This document shows positions 8,957 through 64,000 of a stretch of 64,000 nucleotides of DNA, piece by piece. Below the pieces are notes generated by a model, which worked only from the letters and a program-made list of their open reading frames with translations, made no database searches and was not told the DNA's origin. The position numbers and the translations under genes were made by a program. The DNA is from Macrostomum lignano (Eukaryota): positions 124,001 through 188,000 of the forward strand of contig NIVC01001126.1 in NCBI GenBank assembly GCA_002269645.1, read 5' to 3'. Every line of letters begins with the position of its first letter. Position 1 is the first letter of the stretch.

Positions 8957-9124
8957 CCATGTTTGGGCCTGAGTTTACCTGCTAGCTATAGCGTATTAAA
9001 CTGACTTTTGATCTTTGCAAACTGTAATTTGGTACTGCAATCACTGCATTCAGTTAATTTTATTAAAAGGTAATAAATCAATCTCTTGCCGGAGGAATAA
9101 GTCCAGTCCTCGATTATAATGAAA

Positions 9125-10235
9125 ATGGCCTCGCCTCTCCTGGTGTCCTTGAGAATCGCCTCTCCTAGTGGCCTTGAGAATCGCTTCTCTCCGATGGCCC
9201 TGAGAATCGCCTCTCCCCGATGGCCTTGAGAATCGCCTCTCTCCCAATGGCCTCGAGAATTGCCTCTCTCCCGATGGCCTTGAGAATCGCCTCTCACCCA
9301 ATGGCCTCGGGAATTGCCTCACTCGGTGGCCTTGAGAATCGCCTCTCCCCGATGGCCTTGAGAATTGCCTCTCTCCCGATGGCCTTGAGAATCGCCTCTC
9401 TCCCGGTGGCCTTGAGAATTGCCTCTCTCCCGATGGCCTTGAGAATCGCCTCTCACCCAATTGCCTCGGGAATTGCCTCACTCGGTGGCCTTGAGAATCG
9501 CCTCTCCCCGATGGCCTTGAGAATTGCCTCTCTCCCGATGGCCTTGAGAATCGCCTCTCTCCCGGTGGCCTTGAGAATTGCCTCTCTCCCGATGGCCTTG
9601 AGAATCGCCTCTCTCCCGATGGCCTTGAGAATTGCCTCTCTCCCGATGGCCTTGAGAATTGCCTCACTCGATGGCCTTGAGAATTGCCTCACTCGGTGGC
9701 CTTGGGAATCGCCTCTCTCCCGGTGGCCTTGGGAATCGCCTCTCTCCCGGTGGCCTTGAGAATCGCCTCTCCCCGATGGCCTTGAGAATCGCCTCTCTTC
9801 CGATGGCCTTGAGAATTGCCTCACTCGTTGGTCTTGAGAATTGCCTCAGCCTCACTCGGTGGCCTTGAAAATTGTCTCACTCTGGTGGACTTTAGAAATG
9901 CCTCACTCGGTGGCCTTGAGAATTGCCTCACTCGTTGGCCTTGAGAATCGCCTCACTCCGTGGCCTTGAGAATCGCCTCTCCCCGATGGCCTTGAGAATC
10001 GCCTCACTCCGTGGCCTTGAGAATCGCCTCTCCCCGATGGCCTTGAGAATCGCCTCTCTTCCGATGGCCTTGAGAATTGCCTCACTCGGTGGCCTTGAGA
10101 ATCGCCTCACTCCGTGGCCTTGAGAATCGCCTCACTCCGTGGCCTTGAGAATCGCCTCCCCGATGGCCTTGAGAATCGCCTCTCCCGATGTCCTTGAGAA
10201 TCGCCTCTCTCTCTCGGCGATGGCCTTGAGGATCG
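9125..10235. repeat. About 23-27-bp minisatellite (tggccttgagaatcgcctctctcccga)n
   Basis: Direct inspection; explains the ORFs at 8986-10373. Confidence 0.95.
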
Positions 10236-10922
10236 CCCTTCCCCTAGATTCCTAGAATGACGATCGAGAGAGATTCTTCTGGTTAATTGGCCTTCAAAAT
10301 GACCCTGAAAAGCCCATAAAATTATTTTGAAAAACTGTGCAACCATCAATACCAAAATATTAGTCTGTGTCAAACTGCTGCACCTCTACCCGCTGTTATT
10401 GTGTCTCACCCAATGAAGTATGCTTTGCTTTTATAAACCATTGTTGTATTATCCATTGTTGGCTGAATTTAATTTTGCTGCAGATCGAAACAGTTTCACG
10501 CGCCAGTTGTTTGAAGCTTGTAGTGACAAAAATTGCACAGGTTACTATGGCTTTTCTGCGATCCAGTTTGAGCATAGGAACAAGCCCTAGGCATAGGCAT
10601 AGGGTGGGAGGCAATGCAGACAAAATCTGCCGCGTACTTTAGCACTAGAAGCGGCGGATGTGCCAACAAAGGCTGACAAATTTAATTAGTTCTTTTTCGT
10701 CAGCTTGGCGCTTTGATCTGTATAGATTTTATCTGTTGAAAATGCGCTTGAAAATAGTCGGAAATATTGAGGAACTGTGCCCAGTGTTCAAAAAGACAGA
10801 AAGTTTACATATGCTTTCTGTCAGTATGAGCCTAGAGCGAAAGGTCTAATTACAAAGCTATTTACCTGTGGAAGAAGAAATGTTGCACCCAGTATGCGCA
10901 ACAGTGAGATAGGGACTTTTAT

Positions 10923-11062
10923 TTTTTCAGCACAAAAATTGTTACTGCCTTCGATAAGAGGCAGACCTAATGTTCATCTTTTGATATGTTGTGCCTTTCT
11001 TATAGCTCTATAGATAGCTCTATAGAAAATATGAAAGCAATAACAATTTTTGTGCTGAAAAA
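10923..11062. repeat. Short palindromic (hairpin) element, family member 1
   Basis: tttttcagcacaaaaattgttactgc (10923-10948) vs gcaataacaatttttgtgctgaaaaa (11037-11062); related copy at 41807-41899. Confidence 0.75.
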
Positions 11063-11546
11063 TGAAAACTTGTTTATCTCCATAGCGTTTTTTTGCGGCG
11101 AAACCAGCTTCATAAACATTTTCTTCTAAGAAAAGTACTTTCCTGTCCTAGTTTAGTAGTCCTTGGTTATACATGTAAGCATGTAACTTGAAAAATTTCA
11201 CTCTAGTCGGAAATTCCGGCTTCAGTTCAAGACAACTACTACTAGTTGGTTAAGTTGGAACAGACTATATATTGCTTCATCCATGGAGGGGCTTTGGCCA
11301 TAGACAACTTTTTAACTTTTTATTGCTAGAACCAACGCCAGTAGGGTTCTGGCTGACCAATAGAAATTCATTTAAACTCGCAAATGTACTTGCAAAAGTT
11401 CATTACATATTTAGCTATTGGAATATTGTGTAAAGGCGAACAGTTGAAAATTTTACGCACTTGCGACAGAACCTTGACAGTTTTTTTGCTTATTTCATAT
11501 TACACCTAGTAGATTAATCTATTTAGCATAGCATGGAACTTCCGTT

Positions 11547-12410
11547 TATGCTAGTAACAGGCCCAGTTTGTGCTTAGTAAACAGACCCAGTTTGTGCTTA
11601 GTAAACAGACCCAGTTTGTGCTTAGTAAACAGACCCAGTTTGTGCTTAGTAAACAGACCCAGTTTATGCTTAGTAAACAGGCCCAGTTTGTGCTTAGTAA
11701 ACAGACCCAGTTTGTGCTTACTAAACAGACCCAGTTTGTGCTTAGTAAACAGACCCAGTTTGTGCTTAGTAAACAGACCCAGTTTGTGCTTAGTAAACAG
11801 ACCCAGTTTGTGCTTAGTAAACAGACCCAGTTTGTGCTTTGTAAACAGACCTAGTTTGTGCTTAGTAAACAGACCCAGTTTGTGCTTTGTAAACAGACCC
11901 AGTTTGTGCTTAGTAAACAGACCCATTTTATGCTTAGTAACAGGCCCAGTTTATGCTTAGTAAAAAGACCCATTTTATGCTTAGTAAACAGGCCTAGTTT
12001 ATGCTTAGTAACAGGTCCAGTTTATGCTTAGTAAACAGACCCAGTTTATGCTTAGTAAACAGACCCAGTTTGTGCTTAGTAAACAGACCCAGTTTATGCT
12101 TAGTAAACAGACCGGGTTTATGCTTAGTAACAGACCCAGTTTACGCTTAGTAACAGACCCAGTTTATGATTAGTAACAGATCCAGTTTATGATTAGTTAC
12201 AGACCCGGTTTATGTTTAGTAACAGACCCAGTTTATGTTTAGTAAACAGACCCAGTTTGCGCTTAGTAACAGACCCAGTCTATGCTTAGTAAACAGACCG
12301 AGTTTATGCTTAGTAAACAGACCCAGTTTACGCTTAGTAACTGGCCCAGTTTTTCACCCCAGTGGAGTGCATTTCACCCCAGTTTACGCTCAGTAAGTAT
12401 GCTTAATAAA
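11547..12410. repeat. 24-bp minisatellite (gcttagtaaacagacccagtttgt)n running into the glycerol kinase 5' end
   Basis: Direct inspection; 8-aa periodic ORFs. Confidence 0.95.
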
Positions 12411-15400
12411 CGCTGGCACAATGGCCGCGAATTGCTGGCGGACGCGGACTCCGTGCTGATCGGTTCAATCGATCAGGGCACAGGCAGTTCTCGGTTCCTG
12501 GTCTTCTCCTCTTCAACCGGAGCCCTGATCACCTATCACCAGGAGGAGGTGGACATAATCTATCCTAGAAATGGTTGGGCAGAAGCGAACCCTGATCAGT
12601 TAGTACAGAGTGTACTTTCCTGCATCTCGTCTGCCGTATCGAACTTGGCGGCGCTTGGAATAGCAGCTAATAGGATCGGGTGCATTGGCATTGCTAATCA
12701 ACGGGAGACCCTGGTTGCCTGGGACCGGCGAACCGGTGAACCGGTGCACCCGGCAATCCTGTGGCTGGACGCCAGAACCGAACAGACTGTTGAGCGATTG
12801 ATAGCCACTACTAGATCGCGAAGTGCAGCCGAATTTCGTAGCATCTGCGGCCTGCCAATCACTACATATTTTACTGGGGTGAAAATTCGATGGTTGCTAG
12901 ATAATGTGCCTGCGGCTAGGGAGCTACAGTCAAGCGGCAATCTTATGATGGGTACAGTGGACACCTGGCTGTTGTATAAGCTTACTGGTGAGTATGGCGA
13001 GGATGCCTTTTCGATACATATCGGTGGTCATCTAGATTGCATAGGTTCGATACCTATCGGTGGTCATCTAGATTGCATAGGTTCAATACATATCGGTGAG
13101 CATCTAGATTGCATAGGTTCAATACATATCGGTGGGCATCTAGGCTGCATAGGCTCGATAAATATCGGTGGGCATCTAGGCTGCATAGGCTCGATACATA
13201 TCGGTGGGCATCTAGGCTGCAGAGTTCGGTACATATCAGTGGGCATCTAGACTGCAGAGTTCGATACATATCGGTGGGTATCTAGACTGCAAAGTTCGAT
13301 ACATATCGGTGGGTATATAAATTCCATATGTTCGATAAATATCGGTGGGCATCTAGACTGCAGAGCTCGGTACATATCAGTGGGCATCTAGACTGCAGAG
13401 TTCGGTACATATCAGTGGGCATCTAGGCTGCATAGGCTCGATACATATCGGTGGGCATCTAGGCTGCATAGGCTCGATACATATCGGTGGGCATCTAGGC
13501 TGCAGAGTTCGGTACATATCAGTGGGCATCTAGGCTGCATAGGCTCGATACATATCGGTGGGCATCTAGGCTGCATAGGCTCGATACATATCGGTGGGCA
13601 TCTAGGCTGCAGAGTTCGGTACATATCAGTGGGCATCTAGACTGCAGAGTTCGATACATATCGGTGGGTATCTAGACTGCAAAGTTCGATACATATCGGT
13701 GGGTATATAAATTCCATATGTTCGATAAATATCGGTGGGCATCTAGACTGCAGAGCTCGGTACATATCAGTGGGCATCTAGACTGCAGAGCTCGGTACAT
13801 ATCAGTGGGCATCTAGACTGCAGAGTTCGATACATATCGGTGGGTATCTAGACTGCAAAGTTCGATACATATCGGTGGGTATATAAATTCCATATGTTCG
13901 ATAAATATCGGTGGGCATCTAGACTGCAGAGCTCGGTACATATCAGTGGGCATCTAGACTGCAGAGTTCGGTACATATCAGTGGGCATCTAGACTGCAGA
14001 ATTCGATAAGTCAGATAATTGATTTTACCTTGCACCAACCGTAGGCGAATACGCTACCGACGTAACAAACGCCTCTCGCACAATGCTACTCGACTTGGCA
14101 ACCTGCCAATGGGATCCTAGGCTTTGTCGTTTCTTCGGTCTAGATCAGAAAATGCTTCCAAAAGTGTGTTCCAGCGCGGAACTGTTCGGCCGTATTAGTG
14201 TGGCCGACTGTCCGTTAGCAGGCGTCCCAATCACCGGCATTCTGGGCGATCAACAGGCCGCTTTAGTTGGCCAAGGCTGTTTAGAATCTGGCGACACAAA
14301 AAACACCTACGGCAGCGGCTGTTTCATGCTGTGCAATACCGGGTTGAGTCCGGTGGTGTCCAGCTCTGGATTGCTAACCACAGTTGCCTATCAGCTGGGC
14401 AGGTCTGCCGCTCCTGTGTACGCTTTGGAGGGTAGCGTAGCAGTGGCTGGTACGGCAATCCGATGGCTGCGAGACAGTCTGGGCATTGTTGGCAGCGTAG
14501 CGGAGACTGAAACTCTGGCTGGCAAAGTGCCAGACACTGCCGGCTGCTATTTTGTGCCGGCTTTCAATGGCTTGTATTGTCCGTATTGGCGCAGCGACGC
14601 TCGCGGCCTGATTGTCGGTCTGACTGGCGCTACAAGCCGGGAGCATCTGTGCCGCGCCGCTCTTGAAGCTGTGTGCTACCAGAGCAGGGAGCTGTTGGAC
14701 TGCATGGAGACCGAGTGTGGCACTACGCTTAATAGGATTAAGGTTTGCGTGGAGATTGTTGCTCACTGGGGGGTTGCAGCTCAGTGTTAGGCTGGTAAAT
14801 CAGTGCTGGAGTGACTATAGTACTGGAGTGACTATTAGTGTTGGAGTGACTATTAGAGTACTGGAGTAACTATTAGAGTATTGGAGTGATTATTAGAGTG
14901 TTCGAGTGACTTTTAGAGTACTGGAGTGACTATTAGAGTGCTGGAGTGACTCTTAGAGTACTGGAGTGACTATTAGAGTACTGGAGTGACTATTAGAGTA
15001 CTGGAGTGATTATTAGAGTGTTCGAGTGACTTTTAGAGTACTGGAGTGACTATTAGAGTGCTGGAGTGACTCTTAGAGTACTGGAGTGACTATTAGAGTA
15101 CTGGAGTGACTATTAGAGTGCTGGAGTGACTCTTAGAGTACTGGAGTGACTATTAGAGTGCTGGAGTGACTCTTAGAGTACTGGAGTGACTATTAGAGTG
15201 CTGGAGTGACTCTTAGAGTACTGGAGTGACTATTAGAGTGTTGGAGTGACTTTTAGAGTACTGGAGTGACTATTAGAGTGTTGGAGTGACTTTTAGAGTA
15301 CTGGAGTGACTATTAGAGTGCTGGAGTGACTCTTAGAGTACTGGAGTGACTATTATAGTACTGGAGTGACTATTAGAGTGTTGGAGTGACTTTTAGAGTA

Positions 15401-16058
15401 CTGGAGTGACTATTAGAGTGTTGGAGTGACTTTTAGAGTACTGGAGTGACTATTAGAGTGCTGGAGTGACTCTTAGAGTACTGGAGTGACTCTTAGAGTA
15501 CTGGAGTGACTATTAGAGTGCTAAAGTGACTGGGGTGACTTCTAGAGTGATTAATAGTTGAGTTTAGAGAGTGCATTAGTTAAGATACAGTAAAAGTGCT
15601 TGGGATTAAACTTGTACTCTGCTTGAGTCACTAGCTGGCTATTTATGCACTCCATTCTTCAGGTGGACGGCGGCATGACATCCAACAGGCTGCTGATGCA
15701 GCTGCAAGCGGACCTGGCCGGGGTCACAGTTGTCCGACCCGAGATGGCCGAGACAACAGCCTTGGGCGCCGCCGTTGCCGCAGCCTGGGGCCACGGCATC
15801 GACATGACGGCCTCAGTCAGGCAGAGCAGCGTCACGGAGTTCTACCCCATGACTGGGCCAGTTGACCGGCTGAGGAAATTCCAGCGATGGCTGGACGCTG
15901 TACAGCGAAGCATTGGCTGGCACCGGCAAGAGGATGACGGCGAGGGCGACGCTGGCGGATCGTCCGCGGGGTCCTTGGGCTCCGCTGGTCATCTGGCTTT
16001 CGCCGTTTTTCTTGTCGGCTCCGCCGCTCTGTTAGCGCTGAGCTTGTCGGTTAAATAA
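12399..16058 (+). CDS. GK: Glycerol kinase (3 exons: 12399-12987, 14045-14742, 15663-16058; about 560 aa; start codon uncertain)
   Basis: FGGY motifs [39 protein letters not shown]|[79 protein letters not shown]; all splice phases consistent. Confidence 0.95.
13010..14006. repeat. 35-36-bp minisatellite filling GK intron 1
   Basis: (tcgatacatatcggtgggcatctaggctgcataggc)n with variant blocks. Confidence 0.95.
14800..15535. repeat. 20-bp minisatellite filling GK intron 2
   Basis: (ctggagtgactattagagta)n. Confidence 0.95.
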
Positions 16059-18620: not shown

Positions 18621-20068
18621 TCTAAAGGGAGTAGATTGGTGAAGCGCCCATAGCCGTGCGCCTTCTATTGTATGCGCATACTTTACTATGTATGTTTTCC
18701 TGGCTCAGCCCTTTTGACTGCCGCGCGTATATACACGTTTCGTTTCCAAGTGCATAAATGTAGGTGAAAAATCAATTTTTAGCAGTATTTTTAATATTTC
18801 ACACGCGTTCGCTCTCCCGACCCGTCAAGGTTCCGATGGAGTTTAGTCAGTCATTTCAGGGAAAACCTTTATTTTATGTGCTTGCCTATTATGAAAATTT
18901 AGAATTGATTATAATTAGTATGTGGATAAAGTGGAATTGGTAAAGTGATGAAATGCATCAAGCAATCGTCAATCAATAGTCTAAATGGGAATCTAATTGA
19001 AATCGGTTTAATGCTCTATAAAAATGGATTTAAGCTCCACGCTTATGCATATTGCATATTGCCGAAATAACTGCATTGGGTCTTGTGAATTGCTTGATAA
19101 TATTTCTGCTGCAGGCTCTGTCAGTCGCTATCCTAACATGTAATTTTTTACAGCGTATCAGATTTCATCCGTGTTTGGGGTCATGACCAAATCTATTACT
19201 CTTATTATATCTCACTCATTCATTTTATAATACATTCCGATGAAATTCTTGGCTTGTGAGCATCGATAAGATTTCTTTAAAGTTCAAGCCAACCAAATAC
19301 TTGAGCCTAATAAACTAACCTAGACGATAAACCTAGGCTAAAAAACTATAAGCCTAACCTAAAACAGAGCCCTAACCCGTATAGCCTAAATCGATGGCAG
19401 TCTGACAAGCCATGGACTTTATCCGCTCCGGAGTCGTATTCCAAACAATGCGCCAACCCCCCATTCCCCAAACAATCTGCGCCAACCCCCTTCCCCCAAC
19501 AATCTGCGCCAACCCCCTTTCCCCCAACCGTCTGTTCCAACCCCCCTTCCCCAACAATCTGCTCCAACCCCCTTCCCCAACAATCTGCTCCAACCCCCTT
19601 CCCCAACAATCTGCTCCAACCCCCTTCCCCAACAATCTGTTCCAACCCCCTTCCCCAACAATCTGTTCCAACCCCCCTTCCCCAACAATCTGTTCCAACC
19701 CCCCTTCCCCAACAATCTGCTCCAACCCCCTTCCCCAACAATCTGCTCCAACCCCCTTCCCCAACAATCTGCTCCAACCCCCCTTCCCCAACAATCTGCT
19801 CCAACCCCCTTCCCCAACAATCTGCTCCAACCCCCTTCCCCAACAATCTGCTCCAACCCCCTTCCCCAACAATCTGCTCCAACCCCTTCCCCAACAATCT
19901 GCTCCAACCCCCTTCCCAACAATCTGCTCCAACCCCCTTCCCCGACAATCTGCTCCAACCCCCTTCCCCAACAATCTGCTCCAACCCCTTCCCCGACAAT
20001 CTGCTCCAACCCCCTTCCCCGACAATCTGTGCCAACCCCCTTTCCCCAACCGTCTGTTGCAACCCCCC

Positions 20069-20340
20069 GGGAGCACGAGAATTTCCCACAGGAAGTTTTC
20101 CCGCCGAGCTTTTCCCACCGAGGTTTTCCCGAAGGATTTTTACAGTCGGAATTTCAAGTAAAACCAGTCTATAGACATTGCTGGACTAAATTAGAACTAG
20201 CCTAGAGTAGATTTTAAATCCGATTAGATTTGACTTGAAATTCCGACATGAAAAACCCTGCGGGAAAACCTCGCCGCGGGGAAATCTCGGCAGGGAGAAG
20301 CTCGGCGGGAAGACTTCCTGCGGGAAATTCTCATAGACCC
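20069..20340. mobile_element. 272-bp long-TIR MITE, copy 1 (Mutator-like architecture)
   Basis: About 90-100-bp inverted arms GGGAGCACGAGAATTTCCC... / ...GGGAAATTCTCATAGACCC; CAACCCCCC on both sides (possible 9-bp TSD, confounded by the host repeat). Confidence 0.8.
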
Positions 20341-20717
20341 CAACCCCCCTTCCCCCAACCGTCTGTTCCAACCCCCTTCCCCAACAATCTGCTCCAACCC
20401 CCTTCCCCTACCGTCTGTTCCAACCCCCTTCCCCAACAATCTGCTCCAACCCCCTTCCCCAACAATCTGCTCCAACCCCCCTTCCCCAACAATCTGCTCC
20501 AACCCCCTTCCCCAACAATCTGCTCCAACCCCCTTCCCCAACAATCTGCTCCAACCCCCTTCCCCAACAATCTGCTCCAACCCCCTTCCCCAACAATCTG
20601 CTCCAACCCCCTTCCCAACAATCTGCTCCAACCCCCTTCCCCGACAATCTGCTCCAACCCCCCTTCCCCGACAATCTGTGCCAACCCCCTTTCCCCAACC
20701 GTCTGTTGCAACCCCCC

Positions 20718-20989
20718 GGGAGCACGAGAATTTCCCACAGGAAGTTTTCCCGCCGAGCTTTTCCCACCGAGGTTTTCCCGAAGGATTTTTACAGTCGGAA
20801 TTTCAAGTAAAACCAGTCTATAGACATTGCTGGACTAAATTAGAACTAGCCTAGAGTAGATTTTAAATCCGATTAGATTTGACTTGAAATTCCGACAGGA
20901 AAAACCCTGCGGGAAAACCTCGCCGCGGGGAAATCTCGGCAGGGAGAAGCTCGGCGGGAAGACTTCCTGCGGGAAATTCTCATAGACCC
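20718..20989. mobile_element. 272-bp long-TIR MITE, copy 2
   Basis: Near-identical to copy 1 with the same flanks; offset 649 bp. Confidence 0.8.
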
Positions 20990-21418
20990 CAACCCCCCTT
21001 CCCCCAACCGTCTGTTCCAACCCCCTTCCCCAACAATCTGCTCCAACCCCCTTCCCCTACCGTCTGTTCCAACCCCCTTCCCCAACAATCTGCTCCAACC
21101 CCCTTCCCCAACAATCTGCTCCAACCCCCCTTCCCCAACAATCTGCTCCAACCCCCTTCCCCAACAATCTGCTCCAACCCCCTTCCCCAACAATCTGCTC
21201 CAACCCCCTTCCCCAACAATCTGCTCCAACCCCCTTCCCCAACAATCTGCTCCAACCCCCTTCCCAACAATCTGCTCCAACCCCCTTCCCCGACAATCTG
21301 CTCCAACCCCCCTTCCCCAACAATCTGCTCCAACCCCCTTCCCCGACAATCTGCTCCAACCCCCTTCCCCGACAATCTGTGCCAACCCCCTTTCCCCAAC
21401 CGTCTGTTGCAACCCCCC

Positions 21419-21690
21419 GGGAGCACGAGAATTTCCCGCAGGGGGTTTTCCCGCCGAGCTTTTCCCACCGAGGTTTTCCCGAAGGATTTTTACAGTCGGA
21501 ATTTCAAGTAAAACCAGTCTATAGACATTGCTGGACTAAATTAGAACTAGCCTAGAGTAGATTTTAAATCCGATTAGATTTGACTTGAAATTCCGACAGG
21601 AAAAACCCTGCGGGAAAACCTCGCCGCGGGGAAATCTCGGCAGGGAGAAGCTCGGCGGGAAGACTTCCTGCGGGAAATTCTCATAGACCC
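21419..21690. mobile_element. 272-bp long-TIR MITE, copy 3
   Basis: Near-identical; offset 701 bp from copy 2. Confidence 0.8.
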
Positions 21691-22724
21691 CAACCCCCCT
21701 TCCCCCAACCGTCTGTTCCAACCCCCTTCCCCAACAATCTGCTCCAACCCCCTTCCCCTACCGTCTGTTCCAACCCCCTTCCCCAACAATCTGCTCCAAC
21801 CCCCTTCCCCAACAATCTGCTCCAACCCCCCTTCCCCAACAATCTGCTCCAACTCCCCTTCCCAACAATCTGTTCCAACCCCCCTTCCCCCAACCGTCTG
21901 TTCCACCCCCCTTCCCCAACAATCTGCTCCAACCCCCTTCCCCAACAATCTGCTCCAACCCCCTTCCCCAACAATCTGTTCCACCCCCCTTCCCCAACAA
22001 TCTGCTCCAACCCCCCTTCCCCAACAATCTGTTCCAACCCCCCTTCCCCCAACCGTCGGTTCCAACCCCCTTCCTCTAACAATCTGCGACCCCTTACCCT
22101 GGCCGAGTTGTTCGACGTGATCTGTGCACATGCTCAAGTCCCGAAGTCAGTTTGCTTAGTGATCTAAGAGAACCACACCGTCACAACAGTAGCACTTGCT
22201 TCAGGTGCTTTCAGTCTTTTTCACTGCAAGTCGGATCCAGCATGCGAGTAGCTAACAAAAATTACAAATCTATCGCTTCCCTACCGAGGATCTCCTGCTA
22301 ACATCCGGGACATGATGACATCCTTCCTGCTGACTTGAAGAATTCATGTCTTTTAGAACAACACTGTTTTTCTTCGTTAAGCAGCTGGTGCTCTGTCCGA
22401 CCATGTCTAATGAACATCGCTTCACCGGCACTAAGTACTATGTTAAATCTGACATTCATGCTTCCCGAGCAAAGCTTGCTGAAGAACTTGAGCTTCAGGT
22501 GTTGCCTAGCTCCTATTTGTACGGAATTACATTAAGCCTTCTCTTCGGTAATAAAGATTTATCCTCTTATCTTAGCTAATGAGATATTCAACGAATGACG
22601 CGTTACATGTTGCAACAGATTAATAGAAATGAAAATGATCTGCCTCCGCATTATTTAATCCCTGACTTAAAGAGCTGACTTTCCTGCGCCTCTCCTCCCC
22701 CTGATAAACCCGTGCAGTTTTTGA

Positions 22725-23580: not shown

Positions 23581-24112
23581 AGATTCGAGCGAAAACCATG
23601 CAGCCTCCAGCGAAAGCAGCAAAATTTTCGAGGTCTCGTGTAGGGGGCCTTGGGCTTCTGTTGACCATCTCATGAATGATTTACGTCAAGCAGAAAATTG
23701 AATTAGTTTAATTACTGAGAAAGAGGTGAAGTTTCCGGGTGTCATACTAAGCAAGAAATAGGTTTCACTGATGCATTGTTACGGACATATTTTACACAGA
23801 AATCGTCAACTTGACTAAATTATTTTAGAGCCTCATCCATGCTTAATCGATAGAATGACTATTCTGAAGCGCCCACTCGCAGCGGCACCAGCTCCACCGG
23901 CGCTGTGGCTGGTCTGTTCCTGCCCGGGTTGGAACTAGCGGTGCGGCTGCTGTTGTTTCCATGGTTTCCACGGCGCTGGCATCGAAAGAAGCGCAACAGC
24001 CAAGCCTGATAGGTGGAGTCTGCAGCGAACAGAAAGGCTGGGTTAATAGCCGAATTCGTCAGAGCCAGCCACATAAACCCCATGTAGACATCCTTGGCAA
24101 TGAAGAGATGCC

Positions 24113-24161
<49 letters not shown>

Positions 24162-25029
24162 AGGTGAAAAAACGGTCGCCAGAAGCCAGAGATCGGCTCC
24201 CAGATTCCAAAGCTGAATTGGCGCCCAACAGATGGCGAACAGGCCAACCAGCAGAGCGGACAGCCGGAACATCCGCCTTGACCGGGCGATTCGGTCGCGA
24301 CTGAGCCGATTGTTGCGACACTGGGGCTGGTCGAAGGCGCACAGGCTGTGCCCGACGCTGGACACCAGGCGGCAGATGCGGCGGTAAGCTGTGGCAATGA
24401 TGCTCAGCGGTGCCACCAGCAGCACCAGCACGATGAAGCTCGAATAGGCGGCTCGAGCTGCCACTTCAACTTCCGGTCGAGCATCGTTGCCGTCGAATCC
24501 CAGCAGTTCCAGGCTGCGCTTCCAGCTGTCCTCGCAGCAGAAGGCAGCCGCGCTCTCGTCTAGACTCAAGTTGCCGGCTTCGGGCACGTAGCAGGGCACC
24601 AGATGGTAGTTGACGGCGTTGGGAAAGGCTGAAACGCCAGCCAGGATCCAGATGAGCGCCAGACTCCCCACGCTGGACCGCCACAATGTACCGAACCTCC
24701 GGCAGCAAGCGGACTCAGCGGTGACGCCGGCGGCCTGCCCGATGGCGCCACGAACCAGGCTCACCACGCCTCGGCATCGCCGCATGCTGACGGCCGTCAG
24801 GGTGAAGATGGAGGCGAACATCAGCAGGATGCTGCCGAAGCAGGAGAACACGCAGACCGGCTCGCCCAAGTCCCAACTGAAGCGGACGAATGCGTAGGCC
24901 GTCACTGGAACTACCATCGCGCCGATGGCCAAGTCGCAGAGGCACAGATTCATCAGCAACAAAGCGATTTGGCTCCGGCGCTGCTTTCGAGTGGCCAGAA
25001 TGGCCTTCATCAGCAAGCCGTTGCCGACA

Positions 25030-28000
25030 CAAGGACTACTTAAGTAGAAGGACGCTGCACTCCCGAATGGTGTAGATTTTTTTGAAGGCCATTTTTCAAA
25101 ATGCTGTTATTTTTAAATGGTTGCATGTAGAGGTCTAGTTTTTTCACGGGGTTGCTCAGAATTTATTCCTCTTTTAGATGAGTGAACAGTTTCGGCTGCA
25201 ACTACATGTATTCGCGAGAAATGTACAGCAAGGTACTGTTACCCCCTTCTTTATTATAGAACAATAAAGCTAGGATATTTAAAGGATAATTCCGACAATT
25301 GAGCTAATGTAATCCAATTAAAATGAGATGAGATTAACAAAGAACGAAGCCCGTCAGTCTGTACTTTTCAAAAGCCATCCCTGATCTTTTCAACAATAAA
25401 ATAACAAAGAGCAAAAGCAGAGAAACTGGCACAATGCCAGTGCTGATAACAATCGATGTATCGTTGTTGGACTGGAAACAAAAAATGTTGAACTGAACTG
25501 GTTGCTTGTTGCACAGCAGCTCATTGTACTTTAATCTCAATTGATAGCTACAGTAAGGCAAATATGTATGTAAGGCTGCAAATATAAGACTGTGTATAGT
25601 GTATAGTGTATAGAAACTGTGGCAACTATTGGGTAGGCAACAGCAGTAAAATGCAGAAACCAACTTATGAAAGCAGCAACAAATGTTTAAACCAACGTAT
25701 GAAAGCAGCAACAGATGCATAAACCAACTTATGAAAGCATAAGCATATTCAATGACGTGAATGTGAATTGGGTCTGTATAAAACATGGACAACCATGGAC
25801 TATGGGTCAAATTACATGCTCAATCAATTAACAATGTTCGCTTCAATTCTACGAGCTATGTTGCCTCCGATTTTGGCTTATTGCATTTTTGGTTGGATAT
25901 TTCGATATTTTCCAGTGTCCACTTCGTTTGTTTAAATTAGAGGTGTCTAAGTGTACAATGGGTGTTCAAGTTTTATACGAACTCGGTGTGTTGATAGAAT
26001 GTCACGGATTTCTCAAAAAGCGTACAAACAGCTCATAACTAACTTGATGCTAACTTTCGCAGACGCCGTCCACTGCCGGGCGTCTCTCGTACATGGTCCG
26101 AATCACGACGCACGAGTCCTTTAAAAAATGTGTTAGCTAACCTCCTGGAAATGCGGCTAACCTGAGCTGGATCTGAAACAGTTACATCCATGAAAGCTTC
26201 AAAAACGTTAATAAAAGATCGGACACAATAGTTGACGCAGTGGATCTTGACAGAGGAGAAAAAAGCATAGCACAGGCTGGAGAAAACTAAAAGCCACTCT
26301 GGCGGGTGCCGGAGCTTGCCACGAGATAGCAGCGATGTAAATTCGCTACCGCCAGGAAACTCAGTTGCAAATGCTTCAAAAACTTCTGGAAGATGCTCTT
26401 TAGCAGCAACGTAACCGGAAATATAGTACAAAGAAGCATTCTCCTCATCTGTATTGTGGCTGATCTTGTCTTGAAGCTGATCAAACACCTCTAGATCAGA
26501 GTCCTTCATCCCATCGGAACAGCATGTCGCCGGCTCATGAGCCTCAAAGCTGTTCTGAAGCGCTCCGTACAATTTCATTCGGTGCAGCCGAGCACTGGCC
26601 ATAACTTGCTCGACTGTTATGTAGTAACACCCGCCGTGGCCCTGGCGGTAGAGAGCGAACTCGGCCTCCAATCTGTCTGATTGCAGTACACCTTAAAGAC
26701 AATTTCGTGACCCATTAGATAGCCGTGACCTGCATCCCCACAATTCATTAAATTCATTCCCTAGCAACAATTATTCAAAAACTGATTGCTGCATGTAAAT
26801 AATGCAAAGAACTCACCAAGAAGAACGTAAGAAAATCGATGGTTGGTTAGAAGGTGTCTGCTGAGGCCCACCAGACCTCTTGTTGTCTGGATTAAAGCGT
26901 TGCGCGTCTCTGTGGTGAGCGACCGACCGCGTCCCGCACCTCGTCCACCCGGCATGCGCTCCACCAGTGCGGAGAAATTAAGTAAATGTGTCAAGCTGCT
27001 AGATTCTTCCGACGTAATTGGAGCCCTAAGTTTGTCATTCAAGGCAACGTGTGATTCTGGTGATTTAACATTAACTATTTTCCAAAAGGTGACCACATGG
27101 TCCACAAAGTCGGCTGAGTCATGGCGACCGTTAACACGAAGTGCGGCAACCGTCTTCTCGTTGAAGATGTCGACAACTAGTGACACCTTAGATTTGTAGT
27201 TACTTGTACACTTTGGAAGACAGCATTTCATTGGCATTGCAGAAATTCTGAAGCTAACAAAAAGAAATATATACAGCTTCTATACATTATATCTAGTAAA
27301 AAAATTGCTACAATACTGTATTGCTTTTATCCCAACAGGCCAATATAATCAATTCTATACTAAATCACTTCAATAGTATTACTAAAGTTGAAAATTTGTC
27401 TTCTAAAGTCTATTATACGCATTTTCCTTTAGAATCACTTTCTATATATAAATATTTATATTTTAAATTCAATGCAAGGCCTGAGTATTGAATATATCTT
27501 GGTTCCATTAAACTAGACTAGGTTAAAAAACTGCTCTCCAAACAGCAGAAATAAATTCAATATGTTGTTAGGCCTATCATTTAAATAAAATATAAAGTTT
27601 CAAGACAAGTCTGAAAATAGAACTTTTGTATCCAGTAGAACCGTTTAAGAAGCCTAATCTACAGATATTTGACAGAATAGTAAAATTAGTACCTTCTATA
27701 CAATATGCAAGTATCTAATATCTATCTACCTTCAAATTAAGAATAATACTTTATAACGATCTACTCATAAACTAATCAGTAGGTCCTTTCTACACAACAT
27801 TTTTGTAGAACATGCTAAAAAAGCATAGTAGGCCCTAGATATTATTATATATCAGGCATAGCCAGGGTATAGACTAACATTTAATATAGAATGTCTATAG
27901 CTAATTTAAATTTACCAAAAAAATAAAGACATAGAAAGCAGTCATCATAGAATGCTAAAGAAACTACTGATTATTGAGAGAAACTAACACTTTAATCCAA

Positions 28001-28309
28001 CCTTTAACATTTAACATTACAGAATTGAAAACCCTCGAAAAAATACGAAGTATTTAAAAGTAAACGTGTCAAGGACACTAACTTGGCGAAATACAATAGA
28101 GGAGCGAATACACTAGGTCTTTTTGATAAGTTTCAGCAGTTTTTTCTTTTCAGCAGGGTTGTAGTCAGTCTGAGCAAGCCATTGAAGATGAAAATCGTGA
28201 ATTTTTTGTATCTCGTTAATGTATTTTTCGGCGAAAATTGGCCTTCAAAAAAAATTACACGAACCGCGAGTGCAGCGTCCTTCTATAAACGATACTTAAG
28301 TAGTCCTTG
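25030..28309 (-). mobile_element. P-element/THAP9-superfamily DNA transposon, internally deleted, 3,280 bp
   Basis: 17-bp perfect terminal IR CAAGGACTACTTAAGTA, extending imperfectly to about 70 bp; perfect 8-bp TSD TGCCGACA (25022-25029 and 28310-28317); transposase exons inside. Confidence 0.95.
26039..27237 (-). CDS. Internally deleted P-element-type transposase (exons 27237-26817, 26691-26039; 357 aa open frame)
   Basis: THAP start MPMKCCLPKCTSNYKS fused directly to KVSLVVDIFNEKTVAAL...FWKIVNVK; intron g|gtgagt ... tttaag|gt joins YVLLG|VLQSDRLEAEFALYRQGHGG; C-terminal LYYISGYV and SRGKLRHP motifs. Confidence 0.85.
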
Positions 28310-29421
28310 TGCCGACAATGGCAGCCAGTCCGGTGAGGCCAAGCAGGCACAGCATCAGGCGGTGGAAACTGCGACCGAAGCCGAAGCTGCCGCTGTTGAC
28401 AGATGGAGGAGCAGTCGCCGGGTCCATGATAGTAAGCTCTCGAATCTGATGCGAATTAAGAGTTAACTAGAATCGATCTGCACGTATATAGATGCTTGTT
28501 ATTCATCCTCTTCTCTTGTGTGGTATATATAATAACTGTGCATATCTGCTTCCTCATGTCTGAGACCTGTCAGGACCAATCAAAATAGCCCTACTTTGAT
28601 CAGCATCAGCATCAGCCACTTGTTTGCTATAGATTGCAGAGAAGCCTTTATATCTCTGCTCCAGATCTCATATGGCCTCAAATTTTGTTTCTAGCCATCT
28701 ATTTGGCATCCGTTTGAGATCGCATCCTATGATCTTTTAAAACACCGATTGACTGCTGATCGTGAATTCATCCATGGTTACAGCAGCTTTGCTAAAATTT
28801 GGATGTGAATGTTGATTCGGAAATGAAGGAAATGAATGAAGGATGAAGGAGAAGAAGCCTTCGACCATAGACAGGTAATTAAAACAATGAGCGGAGATTA
28901 ATTTCTCCGCCGGAGATTAATTCGCGTCGTGCTCGCGGTTCACAGGCCCTGAAATACATTTCTAAGTACAGCGAATAGCGATAGAATCTTTAGTACAATC
29001 TGCGAGCTCCCAAGGCTAAACTTTAATATACAAAATTAGTGCTGGGTTTTCCTTAATTTCCGTTCCGCTGGAACGGTTCTTTAATTTCTTTCCTTTTAGG
29101 TCAAAACCCTGGCATAAAGCTCTATAGAGTCCTGAACCGAATGTGGGTTGTGCACAAAGAGGATTCTGTTTTGCGCTGTCAAAGACTTGAAAGTTGAGTC
29201 TATCTATGGTCAAAAAGCCATCATTTATTATGAATTATTCGATGAAGTGTTCAGACCGCGATTCCTCTTCTGTCACTTTTAGTTTAAAGTCCACAATGTA
29301 TTAGCAGGGGCGTCGCCATGGATTTTATGGTGTGGGGGACAAAGCCGAGAATTCTACATGTACATGTAGATGACTAAATTCCTACATGTACATTATTTTC
29401 AGAAATCGGTGTTGTCAGCAC

Positions 29422-32624: not shown

Positions 32625-34224
32625 GATAATTTTTGCTAATTTAGTATTTTTTGCTTTCAAATAAATTTGGTTGTTGACTCGTTAAACATGAATCCAAAGA
32701 TAACCAACGTTTTTTTGACGACAGAAGTGTTCTGCTTTAATCTCAATAGTCATAGAGCGTCTCGGAAACTATGGAGTACACTATATTGCCGATATGTTTC
32801 GTATAAAACCTAACCAAAATAAATGTACAGCTACTCACCGTGATGCGACACTGCGTTTACATTACGATCGCATAAAAAAACAACGAACAGCCCGAACGAC
32901 CAAACATCGAACGCTGTTTCTTGACTAGATGAGATTTGTACGCAATACATTAATATTAGAAGTATTGCTAAGCTTCAGATCCGAAACGGAATAGCCGATA
33001 TGTTGTGTATGACAGTATATGACAGTATAAGTAGTACGCTTTAGAGCTAAAAAATCCACTAACTAAAAATAACGGCTAGCTTAATTTTACCAAAATAATT
33101 CTGTATGCCTAACTATTTTTAAAGCCCCCCTTATACCCAATTGCATATAACAAATAATTTTTATCTTTGTCTTTCCAGTGTCAGCTGTTTTACATTGTAC
33201 AACACAAGAATACAATAATGTTACTTACTTGCTACTGTCATCGACAAGAAAAAAATAGTCAAAAAACGGAAAAAGTTCATTTGATTATCAGATAGGAAAT
33301 TGCATTTTTCTACAATGAAAGCAAGCTTGAGTGATTTTAAACAGATTTATTTTTTTCTACCGATTTTTTGTAAAAATCAGCACAAAACAACGCATAGTAT
33401 ATGTGGATGGTATGCAAATTAAATAGCTTCTCAGTAAATTCAAGGGCATCACACCAAAGAAACTGTGCCTTGGATTCTGGAATATGAGGGCAGCGCTTGG
33501 CATATAAAAGCATCAACTCACAACACAACAAAAGCATTGTCGCATCCGTGCTTGTGTACAATAAATATCAATTATTTTTTGTTCAAGACATTTTCACATA
33601 AAAAATGAAAAGAAAAAATTTACACAAAATCGAACAAAAGTACATATTATAACATTATTTGTTACACCAATAATCCACCTTTAGCATCTAGTTACTTTAT
33701 TTTTTAGTAAGCATAGAATAAAATTCAAATCAAGCGCAGTGATTTTTCAATTACTATTATTTAGAAAACACAGTAGAAACTAACAACGATCAAATTAATA
33801 TCAACACACTATCAGTGTCACCTAGGTAAGCTACTCAAAGTAGCACTGGTTGACTAGGCCGACGCAAAAATAGGAATTGAGAATCAAATTTGATTATATC
33901 AATAACCAATTTAATTTGCAAGAATATCAGCTTTAAATGAACAAACTACAAGTCTCCAGCAAATATACGCTTTAATGTGTACCGCACAGTCACTGTGGAT
34001 TGTGTATGATAGAAAGCCGGACAGTGAACTGCCCGAATTCGAGATCTCAAGTCCGTGGTCAGTGGTTCGAATCCGTAACGTAGTTTTATAACTCAGTTCA
34101 TAGACGAATCGTTTGTCTCCACGGTAGTTCTGTGCACTGCCAACCGAGAGATGGGAAAGCAGTAAATTTATATTTCATCGCAATTTACTAAAGTGCGCCT
34201 GGACGTCAAATTCTCACCCAGACA

Positions 34225-34715
34225 TCCAAAGCATCAAAATCTCACCCAAAGACATCTCAAACATCTAAATCTCACCCATAGACACCTCAAAGATCTAAAT
34301 CTCACCCATAGACACCTCAAACATCTAAATCTCACCCATAGACACCTCCAACATCTAAATCTCACCCATATACACCTCCAACATCTAAATCTCACTCATA
34401 GACACCTCAAACATCTAAATCTTACCCATAGACACCTCAAACATCTAAATCTTACCCATAGACATCTCAAACATCTAAATCTCACCCATAGACATCTCAA
34501 ACATCTAAATCTCACCCATAGGCACCTCAAACATCTAAATCTCACCCATAGACACCTCAAACATCTAAATCTCACCCATAGACATCTCAAACATCTAAAT
34601 CTCACCCATAGACACCTAAAACATCTAAATCTCACCCATAGACACCTCAAACATCTAAATCTCACCCATAGACACCTCAAACATCTAAATCTCACCCATA
34701 GACACCTTAACATCA
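34225..34715. repeat. 30-bp minisatellite (aaacatctaaatctcacccatagacacctc)n just 3' of JNK
   Basis: Direct inspection. Confidence 0.95.
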
Positions 34716-34800
34716 AAACTTCAACCCATTTAAGCACCGAAGTTTTACGACTCCATTAACGGTGTTAAGCAGGTAATAAACTCAGAAGATTGTAAGTCAA

Positions 34801-39119
<4,319 letters not shown>

Positions 39120-40570: not shown

Positions 40571-41769
40571 AAGAGTACTGTCACTGAATATTTTTTTAAA
40601 GTATGATCGATCAGAGTAGCAAAGAACATTTTCTATGAAATTAATCAAAATTCAATCTAGATCTAGTTCAAATTTTCGCCAAAAAGTGCATTGTTAAACA
40701 AGTTAAACATCCTTTTAATTTTGAAATACATTTTTTTGAATATCAGCTCAAAAACAAGCTCAAAATCGTTTGCCATCTGTTACAGTCTCGTTCAAAGTTC
40801 TTTGTGTCGGATCACTTTTCACTTTGAGTCTATTCTGGTTTTCAGTAGACTGCAGTTGCAGGGGTTGCCATTTGCCAATGCCAAATACATTTCGGGGGGA
40901 AGAGATTACGAGCTTACTTGATTTGATTGGTTCGCCCAGCTGACCAACGTTATTAAAAAAATTAATAGGCGACAGTCAACACAGCAGGCGATCAACTAGA
41001 AACCAAATCGATATAAATGGCACTTAATTTGAAAAACTCTTAACTTGAAAATTTTGTAATCGAAATCGCGCATGAAATGATGCAAACACTGGCCAGTTCA
41101 GAAGGAAATTTTCGTTTAAGCGCTGTTACTATCTCAGAATATCAGAACCAGAACCAGAATCAAATCCCTGTACCGCTCTACTAGGTCCTCATAAGAAATT
41201 ATAGTTACATGTATAGTTCAAGAGAGGATCTTTTGGTGACTCAGTCACAACAAAATTATGCAATCCCCCTTTTAACAGAAGGAAGTAGTTCTATAGAGAG
41301 CAAGCAGGGACAACTAAAACTTTTAATTTTAAAACTTTTAGCTGCCAGGCTGCAGCTACATGTATTATGCGCTTCGGTGCCAGCAGCAGAGGAGCTTGGA
41401 GTTGTTGCATGCGTGCAGTGCATCACAAATTTGTACTTCTGTAAACCATATCTTTTGTACTTGGTGGTCTGCACTCACCAGCAATACAAACTGCAGTGCA
41501 TGGCCCTTCTTGCAACAACCATTGCAGGAGCAGAGAGCCATTTTTTGCAATTTATTTTGTCTCTCGAAAATCAGCAGAAATGAAAAACAAATAACATTGA
41601 ATAAGAAAATTGAAATTGTCAAATAATCGTGCAAAATTAAATACATGTACATGCAATTGCATCGATCAGTGCAGAAAATAAAATGAAGAATGCCCAAGAA
41701 CTATACTCAAGTATGAATAAGACAGGACAACTACAGCAGGTCTCTTGGAACTTTTTAGGGGGCAGGTTT

Positions 41770-41935
41770 ACCGAAAAAAATACATTACGGAACATGGAGG
41801 CTTTCATTTTTCAGTACAAAAATTGTTATTAATGCTTTTGATATAGGAGGCAGACCCAACGTTTTATGATAAAGCAATAACAATTTTTGTGCTGAAAAAG
41901 CGAAAACCTCAATTTTCCGTGACGTATTTTTTGCC
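41770..41935. repeat. Palindromic hairpin element, family member 2
   Basis: Arms 41807-41830 and 41876-41899 match the 10923 element, including the loop motif aggcagacc; outer arms aaaaaatacattacggaa / ttccgtgacgtatttttt. Confidence 0.75.
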
Positions 41936-41999
41936 TCCAATTTTTTTTCCAAGAAATGTATAGTTTCCATCCCATCCTTCCACACTTAAGTAGCCATTG

Positions 42000-46684: not shown

Positions 46685-47993
<1,309 letters not shown>

Positions 47994-63725: not shown

Positions 63726-64000
63726 AAGACAAAGTAAGCTGTAAAAGAGTAGCAGAGGGAGACAACAGTTATATAGAATTGTAGAGAGAGATGCCAGAGG
63801 TTGAGAAGAATAGGAACGAATTAAAACACACACACACACACACACATATCTAGCTCGTATCGGCCATCGAAGGCGCCTAGAAAGGCAATGGAGGTGCCAA
63901 AAGCCCAAGCCTTAAGCTATATATACCTGCCTAATTAGTTTTCGTATGTTGGAGTAGGTTTTCTCATGCACAGCGGCATTGTGATGCTCATTTTTGGGGT

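What the first reader, a model, noticed from the sequence alone, without database searches (positions are those of the whole stretch)
25022..28317. P-element-like transposon splits a GPCR exactly in TM1
Seen: 17-bp perfect TIRs and a perfect 8-bp TSD (TGCCGACA); excision in silico restores ...LAAIVG|NGLLMKA and a complete 7TM ORF of about 426 aa. The ORF track shows only the 3' 385 codons. The downstream frame has no stops, so the insertion looks recent. Known: 8-bp TSDs and THAP transposases define the P superfamily. Inference: a natural knockout allele and evidence of recent P-type activity; a downstream ATG could give an N-truncated 6TM product.
Basis: partly seen in the sequence, partly recalled or inferred. 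Interest (0 to 1): 0.7.

Follow-up and report, generated by a model that had tools for sequence, protein, structure and literature searches.

The report
Defective P-type transposon disrupting a GPCR
A 3.3-kb cut-and-paste transposon of the P-element superfamily, itself crippled by an internal deletion, sits inside the first membrane helix of an orphan receptor gene and knocks it out; this is a real and apparently young insertion, but an ordinary kind of event.

Summary
A 3,280-bp element (25030-28309) has perfect 17-bp terminal inverted repeats and a perfect 8-bp target duplication (TGCCGACA). Joining the flanks gives a 426-aa rhodopsin-type GPCR ORF on the minus strand. The break falls at G39/N40, the conserved GN of TM1.

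The P-superfamily call is also right, and now rests on protein evidence. The element carries a two-exon, 357-aa ORF that is 43% identical to residues 491-839 of an 842-aa ORF, a gene call that starts inside a longer 865-aa reading frame. That 865-aa relative has THAP, RNase H-N and GTP-binding-insertion domains. A profile of the family hits the Drosophila P transposase structure 6P5A (E 8e-15).

This copy is non-autonomous. Only about 17 residues of the THAP domain remain, fused to the C-terminal 40% of the transposase. Two of the three catalytic residues are missing.

The interrupted allele encodes a 43-aa peptide. No plausible splice rebuilds TM1.

The closest GPCR relative is a Macrostomum lignano protein at 31-35% identity, and it is contiguous across the junction. 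Two ~300-bp degenerate relatives of the element lie elsewhere in the window.

Verdict: a new member of a known kind. Recency is inferred, not measured.

The parts
25030..28309 (-). Whole transposon, 3,280 bp. The transposase-sense strand is the minus strand, the same orientation as the GPCR.
   Evidence: Bounded by perfect TIRs and a perfect 8-bp TSD. It is the only such structure in the window.
25022..25029 (.). Target-site duplication, left copy (TGCCGACA)
28310..28317 (.). Target-site duplication, right copy (TGCCGACA)
25030..25097 (+). Terminal inverted repeat at the element's 3' end in transposase sense. The first 17 bp are perfect (25030-25046), then imperfect. It contains the subterminal motif TGAAGGCCATT.
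28233..28309 (-). Terminal inverted repeat at the element's 5' end. The perfect 17 bp are 28293-28309. A 9-bp indel follows, then the same subterminal sequence, including TGAAGGCCAATT.
27238..28232 (-). AT-rich non-coding stretch between the 5' TIR and the start codon. The start codon lies 1,072 bp from the element end, against about 200 bp in the full-length relative L004. Its origin is unknown.
   Evidence: No ORF in any frame. No other match in the window. Comparison with L004.
26817..27237 (-). Transposase-remnant exon 1. It consists of Met1 to about residue 17 (the start of the THAP domain, MPMKCCLPKCTSNYKS) fused to the middle of the transposase from KVSLVVDIFNEKT onward.
26692..26816 (-). 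125-nt GT..AG intron, phase 1, in the transposase remnant.
   Evidence: Read from the sequence. Splicing gives YVLLGVLQSDRLE, which aligns without a gap to YILLGLFQSDRLE in relatives.
26039..26691 (-). Transposase-remnant exon 2, stop codon included. It covers the C-terminal RNase H part, with E149 equivalent to DmTNP E531, and the C-terminal domain.
25649..25739 (.). 2.8 copies of a 32-bp tandem repeat in the element's 3' non-coding part.
28310..28427 (-). GPCR 5' coding fragment: Met1 to Gly39 plus the first base of the Asn40 codon. Read on into the element it ends after 43 aa, at a TAA inside the TIR.
23859..25029 (-). GPCR 3' coding fragment: the second TSD copy, then N40 to the stop codon (TM1 C-terminal half to TM7 and the tail). 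It includes a (CAG)16 poly-Q tract at 24114-24160.
41695..41999 (.). Foldback/MITE-like relative of the element, ~305 bp. Its diverged termini are CAAGAACTATACTCAAGTA... and, reverse-complemented, CAATGGCTACTTAAGTG. The flanking 8-mers AGAATGCC and TTAATACC match at 5/8.
10860..11165 (.). Second short relative. Its right end, reverse-complemented, is CAAGGACTACTAAACTA (15/17 to the TIR), with the same internal hairpin as the 41.7-kb copy. The left end is degenerate or truncated.

Best explanation
A non-autonomous, internally deleted member of the P superfamily of cut-and-paste DNA transposons has inserted into the single coding exon of an orphan class-A GPCR. The insertion point is after the first base of the Asn40 codon (the G-N pair, N1.50, of TM1), and it duplicated 8 bp of a near-palindromic target.

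Shown: the ends, the TSD, the restored reading frame, the transposase homology, and the absence of about 505 residues (most of THAP, the HTH, RNase H-N with two catalytic Asp, and most of the GTP-binding insertion domain).

Inferred: (i) the copy was mobilised in trans by a full-length element elsewhere in the genome. (ii) The internal deletion arose by interrupted gap repair after excision, as in Drosophila P derivatives, possibly at a short K(V)S-coding microhomology. (iii) The insertion is young, because both GPCR pieces, the 357-codon transposase remnant, its splice sites, the TSD and the 17-bp termini are all unblemished. (iv) The allele is null: translation stops 4 codons into the element, giving a 43-aa peptide.
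For: - **Ends and TSD:**; unique in the window and absent from shuffles.
- **Restored ORF:** 426 aa with a full 7tm_1 match that begins exactly at the junction.
- **Homologues contiguous across the junction:** AALTNSALI in M. lignano A0A1I8IT42 and AVAGNFLVM in a tachykinin-like receptor.
- **Transposase remnant:** 21 homologues at 26-59% identity, including M. lignano 'Transposable element P transposase'.
- **Extent of the match:** 43% identity, E 1e-89, to residues 491-839 of P0174 only. tblastn with the 865-aa relative finds only its residues 505-862 in the window.
- **PDB:** the family profile hits only 6P5A, aligning D303, D339-x2-H342 and E531 with the family consensus (residue roles from PMC8230255).
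- **Full-length relative L004:** 135-bp TIRs starting CCAAGGAGG, and an 865-aa ORF with THAP 5-80, RNaseH_N and GBD.
- **N-terminus:** MVNKCSVGNCKSNYSSQKS in L004 against MPMKCCLPKCTSNYKSKVS in the window, 9/19 identical and ungapped from Met1, with both Cys in register.
- **Target:** GCCGTTGCCGACAATGGC is self-complementary at 14/18 positions, a level reached by 0.19% of window 18-mers. This fits the palindromic target motifs reported for the superfamily (PMC4168063).
- **Premature stop:**
- **Other copies:** two degenerate short relatives in the window show the family is multi-copy.
Against: - The window protein alone has no Pfam hit and no PDB hit, so superfamily assignment rests on its relatives and their profile.
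- No full-length copy with the same TIR was found. None is in the window, and the left-end 28-mer is absent from the metagenome collection.
- No empty-site allele was examined.
- The age bound is loose. Each ORF would stay stop-free with 5% probability up to about 7% substitutions per site.
- About 1 kb of unexplained non-coding DNA at each end of the element has no counterpart in the relative L004.
- The relative L004 shows no clean TSD.
Confidence: 0.85

Rival explanations
1. The element belongs to another superfamily that makes 8-bp target duplications (hAT), and the P-like label is a coincidence of TSD length.
For: An 8-bp TSD is shared by hAT and P elements (general knowledge). The window protein alone has no Pfam hit.
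Against: Homologues carry only P-type domains: PF21787, PF21788, PF12017, PF12596 and THAP. The family profile hits only the P transposase in the PDB. No hAT or BED domain was reported in any member.
Confidence: 0.02
2. The insertion is tolerated because the element is spliced out, or an internal start is used, so the receptor gene is still functional.
For: Nine in-frame, stop-free GT..AG combinations exist near the junctions. The element's 3' end is open in frame into the GPCR (...LSSPCVGNGLLMKA). Both.
Against: Every candidate donor matches at most 4 of 9 consensus positions. None restores the wild-type TM1; each deletes or replaces 8-30 residues of it. A product starting at M44 would lack TM1. 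There are no expression data.
Confidence: 0.05
3. The insertion is not recent. It is an old, fixed hit in a redundant or already dispensable receptor copy, for example in a polyploid genome, and the intact frames are chance survival.
For: The receptor is atypical: SMR in place of DRY, NPAFLF in place of NPxxY, and a 16-Gln tract in an extracellular loop. It has almost no relatives. The substitution-only bound allows up to about 7% divergence. The nearest named relatives are from M. lignano, described as a recent polyploid (PMC10733133).
Against: The closest homologue shares the same SxQ/R and NPxFLF variants, so they are family traits rather than decay. Three independent features are all intact: 1,281 nt of GPCR, 1,074 nt of transposase remnant with its splice sites, and 8/8 + 17/17 ends.
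Confidence: 0.12
4. The N-terminal 17 residues are not a THAP remnant. The copy is simply 5'-truncated and ATG 27237 is fortuitous.
For: BLASTP and MAFFT can also align CLPKCTSNYKSKVSL to the internal CFP--TNIERQKVSL of relatives, with a 2-residue gap. Pfam cannot score a 23-25-residue peptide.
Against: The ungapped match from Met1 to the THAP starts of two relatives is stronger. KCCVGGCKSNY in L002 matches at 7/11, and MVNKCSVGNCKSNYSSQKS in L004 at 9/19, both inside Pfam THAP hits that begin at that Cys. Both element ends are present, so any deletion is internal in either case.
Confidence: 0.12

Closest known systems
Drosophila melanogaster P element and its internally deleted (non-autonomous) derivatives
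   Same: 8-bp TSD, short TIRs with subterminal inverted repeats, and a THAP-led transposase with an RNase H fold split by a GTP-binding insertion domain. The family profile aligns to 6P5A. Defective copies arise by internal deletion (mechanism cited in PMC4168063). The target site is palindromic.
   Different: The TIR sequence is unrelated (CAAGGACTAC... here) and is 17 bp perfect, about 70 bp imperfect, rather than 31 bp. Protein similarity is detectable only with a profile. Unlike KP-type repressors, this deletion removes the DNA-binding THAP domain and keeps the C-terminal half. The element carries about 1 kb of non-coding DNA at each end.
Full-length relative on ENA contig ERZ27295729 k141_235517 (locus L004; proteins P0174/P0001)
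   Same: It is the closest sequence found: 43% identity over the whole retained region. The terminal CAAGGA and the subterminal TGAAGGCC[A/T]ATT motif are shared. The THAP start is the same.
   Different: L004 is 3,277 bp with 135-bp TIRs and one intronless 865-aa ORF holding all domains. The window copy lacks about 505 residues and has an intron. L004 shows no clean TSD. Its source organism is unknown.
Zebrafish Pdre2/THAP9 elements, and Galileo/1360
   Same: They are P-superfamily members outside the canonical P element, with 13-bp TIRs plus subterminal repeats, 7-8-bp TSDs, and many internally deleted copies (bioRxiv 10.1101/2024.03.22.586318; PMC4168063).
   Different: They come from different lineages and share no detectable DNA similarity. 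Galileo has very long foldback TIRs.
Macrostomum lignano proteins A0A1I8JBV1 (P transposase-like) and A0A1I8IT42 (GPCR)
   Same: These are the nearest named relatives of the element's protein (59% identity over 36% of the query) and of the receptor (31-35%, contiguous TM1, same SxQ/R and NPxFLF variants).
   Different: Both are too distant to be the same gene or the same element family. The source species of the window is therefore only inferred to be a flatworm of that kind.

Membership tests
P superfamily of DNA transposons | 7-8-bp target-site duplication | tested here: met
   Perfect 8-bp TGCCGACA on both sides.
P superfamily of DNA transposons | Terminal inverted repeats, often with subterminal inverted repeats | tested here: met
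   17-bp perfect, about 70-bp imperfect TIR. The terminal CAAGGA and a subterminal motif are shared with the full-length relative L004.
P superfamily of DNA transposons | Transposase homologous to P/THAP9 transposase (RNase H fold with GTP-binding insertion domain) | tested here: met
   The family profile, with the window protein as first row, hits only 6P5A, E 8.2e-15. Relatives carry PF21787, PF21788, PF12017 and PF12596. The window protein alone gives no Pfam or PDB hit.
P superfamily of DNA transposons | N-terminal THAP (C2CH) DNA-binding domain in the lineage's full-length transposase | tested here: met
   THAP scores above the Pfam cut-off in the relatives L002 (E 4e-10) and L004 (E 1e-7).
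P superfamily of DNA transposons | Intact THAP domain in this copy | tested here: not met
   Only about residues 1-17 remain (C5 and C10). The second half, with the C-x2-H, is deleted. This marks the copy as non-autonomous and does not exclude it from the family.
P superfamily of DNA transposons | DDE triad plus [C/D](2)H signature (PMC8230255) | tested here: not met
   This copy keeps only the Glu (E149, aligned to DmTNP E531). The regions aligned to D303 and D339-x2-H342 exist in relatives but are deleted here. The D230 equivalent lies outside the profile alignment and was not tested in relatives.
P superfamily of DNA transposons | Preference for a palindromic target motif centred on the TSD | tested here: inconclusive
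   The single site is 14/18 self-complementary, in the top 0.19% of window 18-mers. One site cannot establish a preference.
hAT superfamily | hAT-type transposase (BED finger, hAT C-terminal dimerisation domain) | tested here: not met
   No such Pfam domain appears in the window protein or in any of 11 relatives.
Class A (rhodopsin-type) GPCR | 7tm_1 profile over seven helices | tested here: met
   84.2 bits against a cut-off of 30.5, profile positions 1-257 of 260. Hydropathy shows six strong segments plus a weaker TM7.
Class A (rhodopsin-type) GPCR | Canonical micro-switch motifs: GN in TM1, DRY, CWxP, NPxxY | tested here: inconclusive
   GN (G39 N40) and CWAP are present. DRY is replaced by SMR, and NPxxY by NPAFLF. 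The closest homologue has the same variants (SLQ, NPIFLF).

The most novel reading that the evidence does not exclude
P-superfamily elements are currently, or were very recently, mobile in a Macrostomum-like flatworm genome. An autonomous partner with the CAAGGACTACTTAAGTA termini would then exist, and this insertion would be a segregating natural null allele of a lineage-restricted orphan GPCR. That would give a native cut-and-paste vector candidate for a flatworm model, and a ready-made receptor knockout.
Probability: 0.35. Interest if true: 0.45.

Novelty: new member of a known kind. Interest (0 to 1): 0.3.

Why it matters
It is a clean, fully resolved example of insertional gene inactivation by a P-type element outside insects and vertebrates. 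It documents the ends, target site and deletion structure of an uncharacterised P-like family, together with a full-length relative found in a public assembly. It also flags a small, divergent GPCR family with SxR/Q in place of DRY and NPxFLF in place of NPxxY. If an autonomous copy is still active, it could be useful for flatworm transgenesis. If not, this is routine annotation of a transposon and a disrupted gene.

Tried and rejected
- **Pfam on the element's ORFs**, separately and spliced, and on the 23-25-residue N-terminal stub: no hit.
- **phmmer of the spliced protein against the PDB:** only a chance hit.
- **First GPCR homology search:** swamped by the poly-Q tract. Repeating it without the tract still gave only 24-26% identical tachykinin-like receptors.
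- **Window-native pieces** (158-aa, 383-aa and 385-aa ORFs): not on record.
- **Exact search for the element's left-end 28-mer in metagenome contigs:** 0 hits.
- **Relatives' contigs L001 and L002:** no recognisable TIR plus 8-bp TSD. L004 has long TIRs but its flanks do not form a TSD.
- **Literature search for P elements in Macrostomum:** nothing.
- **The bacterial promoter/terminator scan** is irrelevant to this eukaryotic locus and was disregarded.
- **hAT classification, an assembly artefact, and an 'element acts as an intron' reading** were considered and rejected or down-weighted, as set out under the rival explanations.
Full report
**1. The observation**

- TGCCGACA occurs at 25022-25029 and again at 28310-28317.
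- Immediately inside these copies lie CAAGGACTACTTAAGTA (25030-25046, + strand) and its perfect reverse complement (28293-28309).
- The inverted repeat does not stop at 17 bp. After a 9-bp indel it continues to about 68-77 bp at 79-87% identity.
- A script that looks for a perfect 10-12-bp TIR flanked by identical 8-mers finds only this structure in the 64-kb window, and none in 20 shuffled windows.

**2. The interrupted gene**

Removing the element and one TSD copy joins the minus-strand coding pieces 28427..28310 and 25021..23859 into a 1,281-nt ORF of 426 aa.
- Pfam 7tm_1 matches residues 39-367, which are profile positions 1-257 of 260, at 84 bits against a cut-off of 30.5.
- The profile begins at the G-N pair of TM1. 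That pair is G39-N40 here, and the insertion lies after the first base of the N40 codon. 'Exactly in TM1' is therefore literally true.
- As it stands, the 5' piece reads ...AAIVG-TRTT-stop, a 43-aa peptide ending at a TAA within the TIR. The 3' piece is the 385-codon ORF in the mechanical list.

The receptor is very isolated.
- An exhaustive HMMER scan of 1.84 billion representative proteins gave only 375 hits at E<=1e-3, and only one at E<=1e-30.
- That best hit is Macrostomum lignano A0A1I8IT42, at 31-35% identity.
- Its alignment runs ungapped across the junction: AIVGNGLLMKA against AALTNSALICS.
- It shares the unusual SMR/SLQ in place of DRY and NPxFLF in place of NPxxY. These variants are therefore family traits, not signs of decay.
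- More distant tachykinin-like receptors are also contiguous at this point: AVAGNFLVM.

**3. What the element encodes**

The minus strand holds a two-exon ORF: 27237..26817, a 125-nt GT..AG intron at 26816..26692, then 26691..26039. It encodes 357 aa. Alone it has no Pfam or PDB hit. The evidence from its relatives is as follows.
- A homology search found 21 relatives at 26-59% identity. One is a M. lignano protein named 'Transposable element P transposase', and several carry PF21787 or PF21788.
- Across eleven aligned members, Pfam finds TNP-like GBD, TNP-like RNaseH_N, the Tnp_P_element HTH and Tnp_P_element_C.
- A profile of that alignment hits one thing in the PDB, the Drosophila P transposase 6P5A/6PE2, at E 8.2e-15.
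- In that alignment the family consensus lines up with D303, D339-x2-H342 and E531. These are the second Asp, the [C/D](2)H motif and the Glu of the P-superfamily signature (PMC8230255).

This is the evidence that makes the element P-type rather than hAT, which also gives 8-bp TSDs.

**4. This copy is a deletion derivative**

- In the multiple alignment the window protein matches only the C-terminal ~340 residues of the longer relatives, from the motif KVSL onward.
- Against P0174, the 842-aa cluster-mate of the best hit, residues 6-357 align to 491-839 at 43% identity, E 1e-89.
- tblastn with the full-length relative finds only its residues 505-862 anywhere in the window.

P0174's contig (locus L004, a 3,710-bp ENA assembly contig) turned out to contain a complete element.
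- Its inverted-repeat arms are 260-394 and 3402-3536 (135 nt, 93% identity), beginning CCAAGGAGG.
- It holds one intronless ORF, 464-3058, of 865 aa, with THAP (5-80), RNaseH_N (308-424) and GBD (457-549).
- Its N-terminus MVNKCSVGNCKSNYSSQKS matches the window's MPMKCCLPKCTSNYKSKVS at 9 of 19 positions. The match has no gap, starts from Met1, and keeps both zinc-ligand Cys in register.
- A second relative, L002, has KCCVGGCKSNY at the start of a Pfam-significant THAP domain.

I conclude that the window copy keeps the true start codon and about 17 residues of THAP, fused to about residue 523 of the ancestral protein.
- About 505 residues (about 1.5 kb) are gone: the rest of THAP, the HTH, RNase H-N with two catalytic Asp and the D(2)H motif, and most of the GTP-binding insertion domain.
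- Only the Glu equivalent (E149) remains, so the copy cannot move itself.
- In L004 the two sites corresponding to the breakpoints share CAAAAGT/CAAAAAGT. This fits deletion at a microhomology during interrupted gap repair, the mechanism known for P derivatives (PMC4168063). For the window's own ancestor this is inference.
- A weaker alternative is that the first 17 residues are the internal CFPTNIERQ segment and the ATG is fortuitous. It cannot be excluded. I give it about 12%.

**5. Other anatomy**

- The start codon lies 1,072 bp from the 5' end and the stop codon 1,009 bp from the 3' end. In L004 the figures are about 200 and 475 bp. The extra DNA is AT-rich, non-coding, and unmatched elsewhere in the window.
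- The 3' part holds 2.8 copies of a 32-bp repeat.
- The window element and L004 share the terminal CAAGGA and a subterminal TGAAGGCC[A/T]ATT at a similar distance from each end. This is a candidate transposase-binding site, by inference only.
- The target, GCCGTTGCCGACAATGGC, is self-complementary at 14 of 18 positions, a level reached by 0.19% of window 18-mers. That agrees with the palindromic target motifs described for the superfamily, but it is a single site.

**6. Other copies**

The TIR search also picked up 11149-11165 (15/17) and 41983-41999 (14/17).
- Both belong to ~300-bp foldback/MITE-like sequences, ~10860-11165 and 41695-41999. They are similar to each other and share the terminal CAAGGAC..TACTTAAG and a subterminal AAAAATACRT motif with the 3.3-kb element.
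- The 41.7-kb copy has both ends, and its flanking 8-mers match at 5/8.
- These are older, degenerate relatives, so the family is multi-copy and long resident in this genome.

**7. Consequence and age**

- The allele should be null. I enumerated GT..AG pairs near the junctions and found nine that are in frame and stop-free. Every donor matches at most 4 of 9 consensus positions, and none rebuilds TM1.
- Recency is inferred from 8/8 TSD, 17/17 termini, 1,281 nt of open GPCR frame, and 1,074 nt of open transposase remnant with intact splice sites.
- Counting substitutions only, each ORF would remain stop-free with probability 0.5 at about 1.7% divergence and 0.05 at about 7%. The bound is loose.
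- No empty-site allele could be sought. Window-native pieces are not on record. The element's end is absent from the metagenome collection.

**8. Context and source**

- The window is eukaryotic and packed with minisatellites.
- It carries mTERF-like, glycerol-kinase-like (FGGY), protein-kinase and DEG/ENaC-like exons.
- The nearest named relatives of both the receptor and the transposase are from Macrostomum lignano, but at low identity. A related flatworm source is likely but not shown.

**9. Verdict**

Three refinements apply: the copy is a non-autonomous deletion derivative, its THAP domain is reduced to a stub, and its TIR is longer than 17 bp. It is a new member of a known kind. Interest is modest unless an autonomous partner and a segregating empty site are found.

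Noticed in passing
window 24114-24160: A perfect (CTG)15.7 tract encodes 16 consecutive Gln in the loop between TM6 and TM7 of the GPCR. The closest homologue has no such tract. It also swamped the first word-based homology search.
   Followed up: partly
window 41695-41999 and ~10860-11165: Two ~300-bp foldback/MITE-like sequences have termini related to the P-like element's TIR and share an internal hairpin (TTTTTCAG[C/T]ACAAAAATTGTTA / its complement). They are probably old non-autonomous relatives.
   Followed up: partly
L004 260-3536 (ENA ERZ27295729 k141_235517): An apparently complete P-superfamily element in a public assembly contig of unknown organism. It is 3,277 bp with 135-bp TIRs at 93% identity and one intronless 865-aa THAP-RNaseH-GBD ORF. 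The gene caller started the ORF 23 codons too late. No clean TSD is visible.
   Followed up: partly
window 9050-9760, 11568-11960, 19346-22137, 34193-37535, 46837-51537, 54072-54891, 56889-58148, 59817-60320, 62996-63908: A very high density of minisatellite arrays, whose units give long spurious ORFs in several frames on both strands. They occupy a large share of the window.
   Followed up: no
window 12282-16058 (+): A glycerol-kinase-like (FGGY_N/FGGY_C) gene lies in at least three coding blocks. The first ORF runs on into a repeat ([12 protein letters not shown]...), presumably intronic minisatellite.
   Followed up: partly
window 52289-52954 and 60326-61306 (-): Two blocks match the amiloride-sensitive sodium channel (ASC, DEG/ENaC) family. 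They cover profile positions 355-439 and 1-236, about 7 kb apart, with minisatellites between them. They could be one gene with a repeat-filled intron, or two fragments.
   Followed up: no
window 42525-43094 (+): A 189-aa ORF whose sequence (…FDVVSLFTNIPLD…) looks to me like a reverse-transcriptase fragment. Pfam gave no hit at E<=1e-3, so this is unverified.
   Followed up: partly
P0024 (M. lignano A0A1I8IT42), residues ~360-747: The closest GPCR homologue is an N-terminally incomplete 747-aa gene model. Its C-terminal half is unrelated to GPCRs, so it is probably a chimeric prediction.
   Followed up: no
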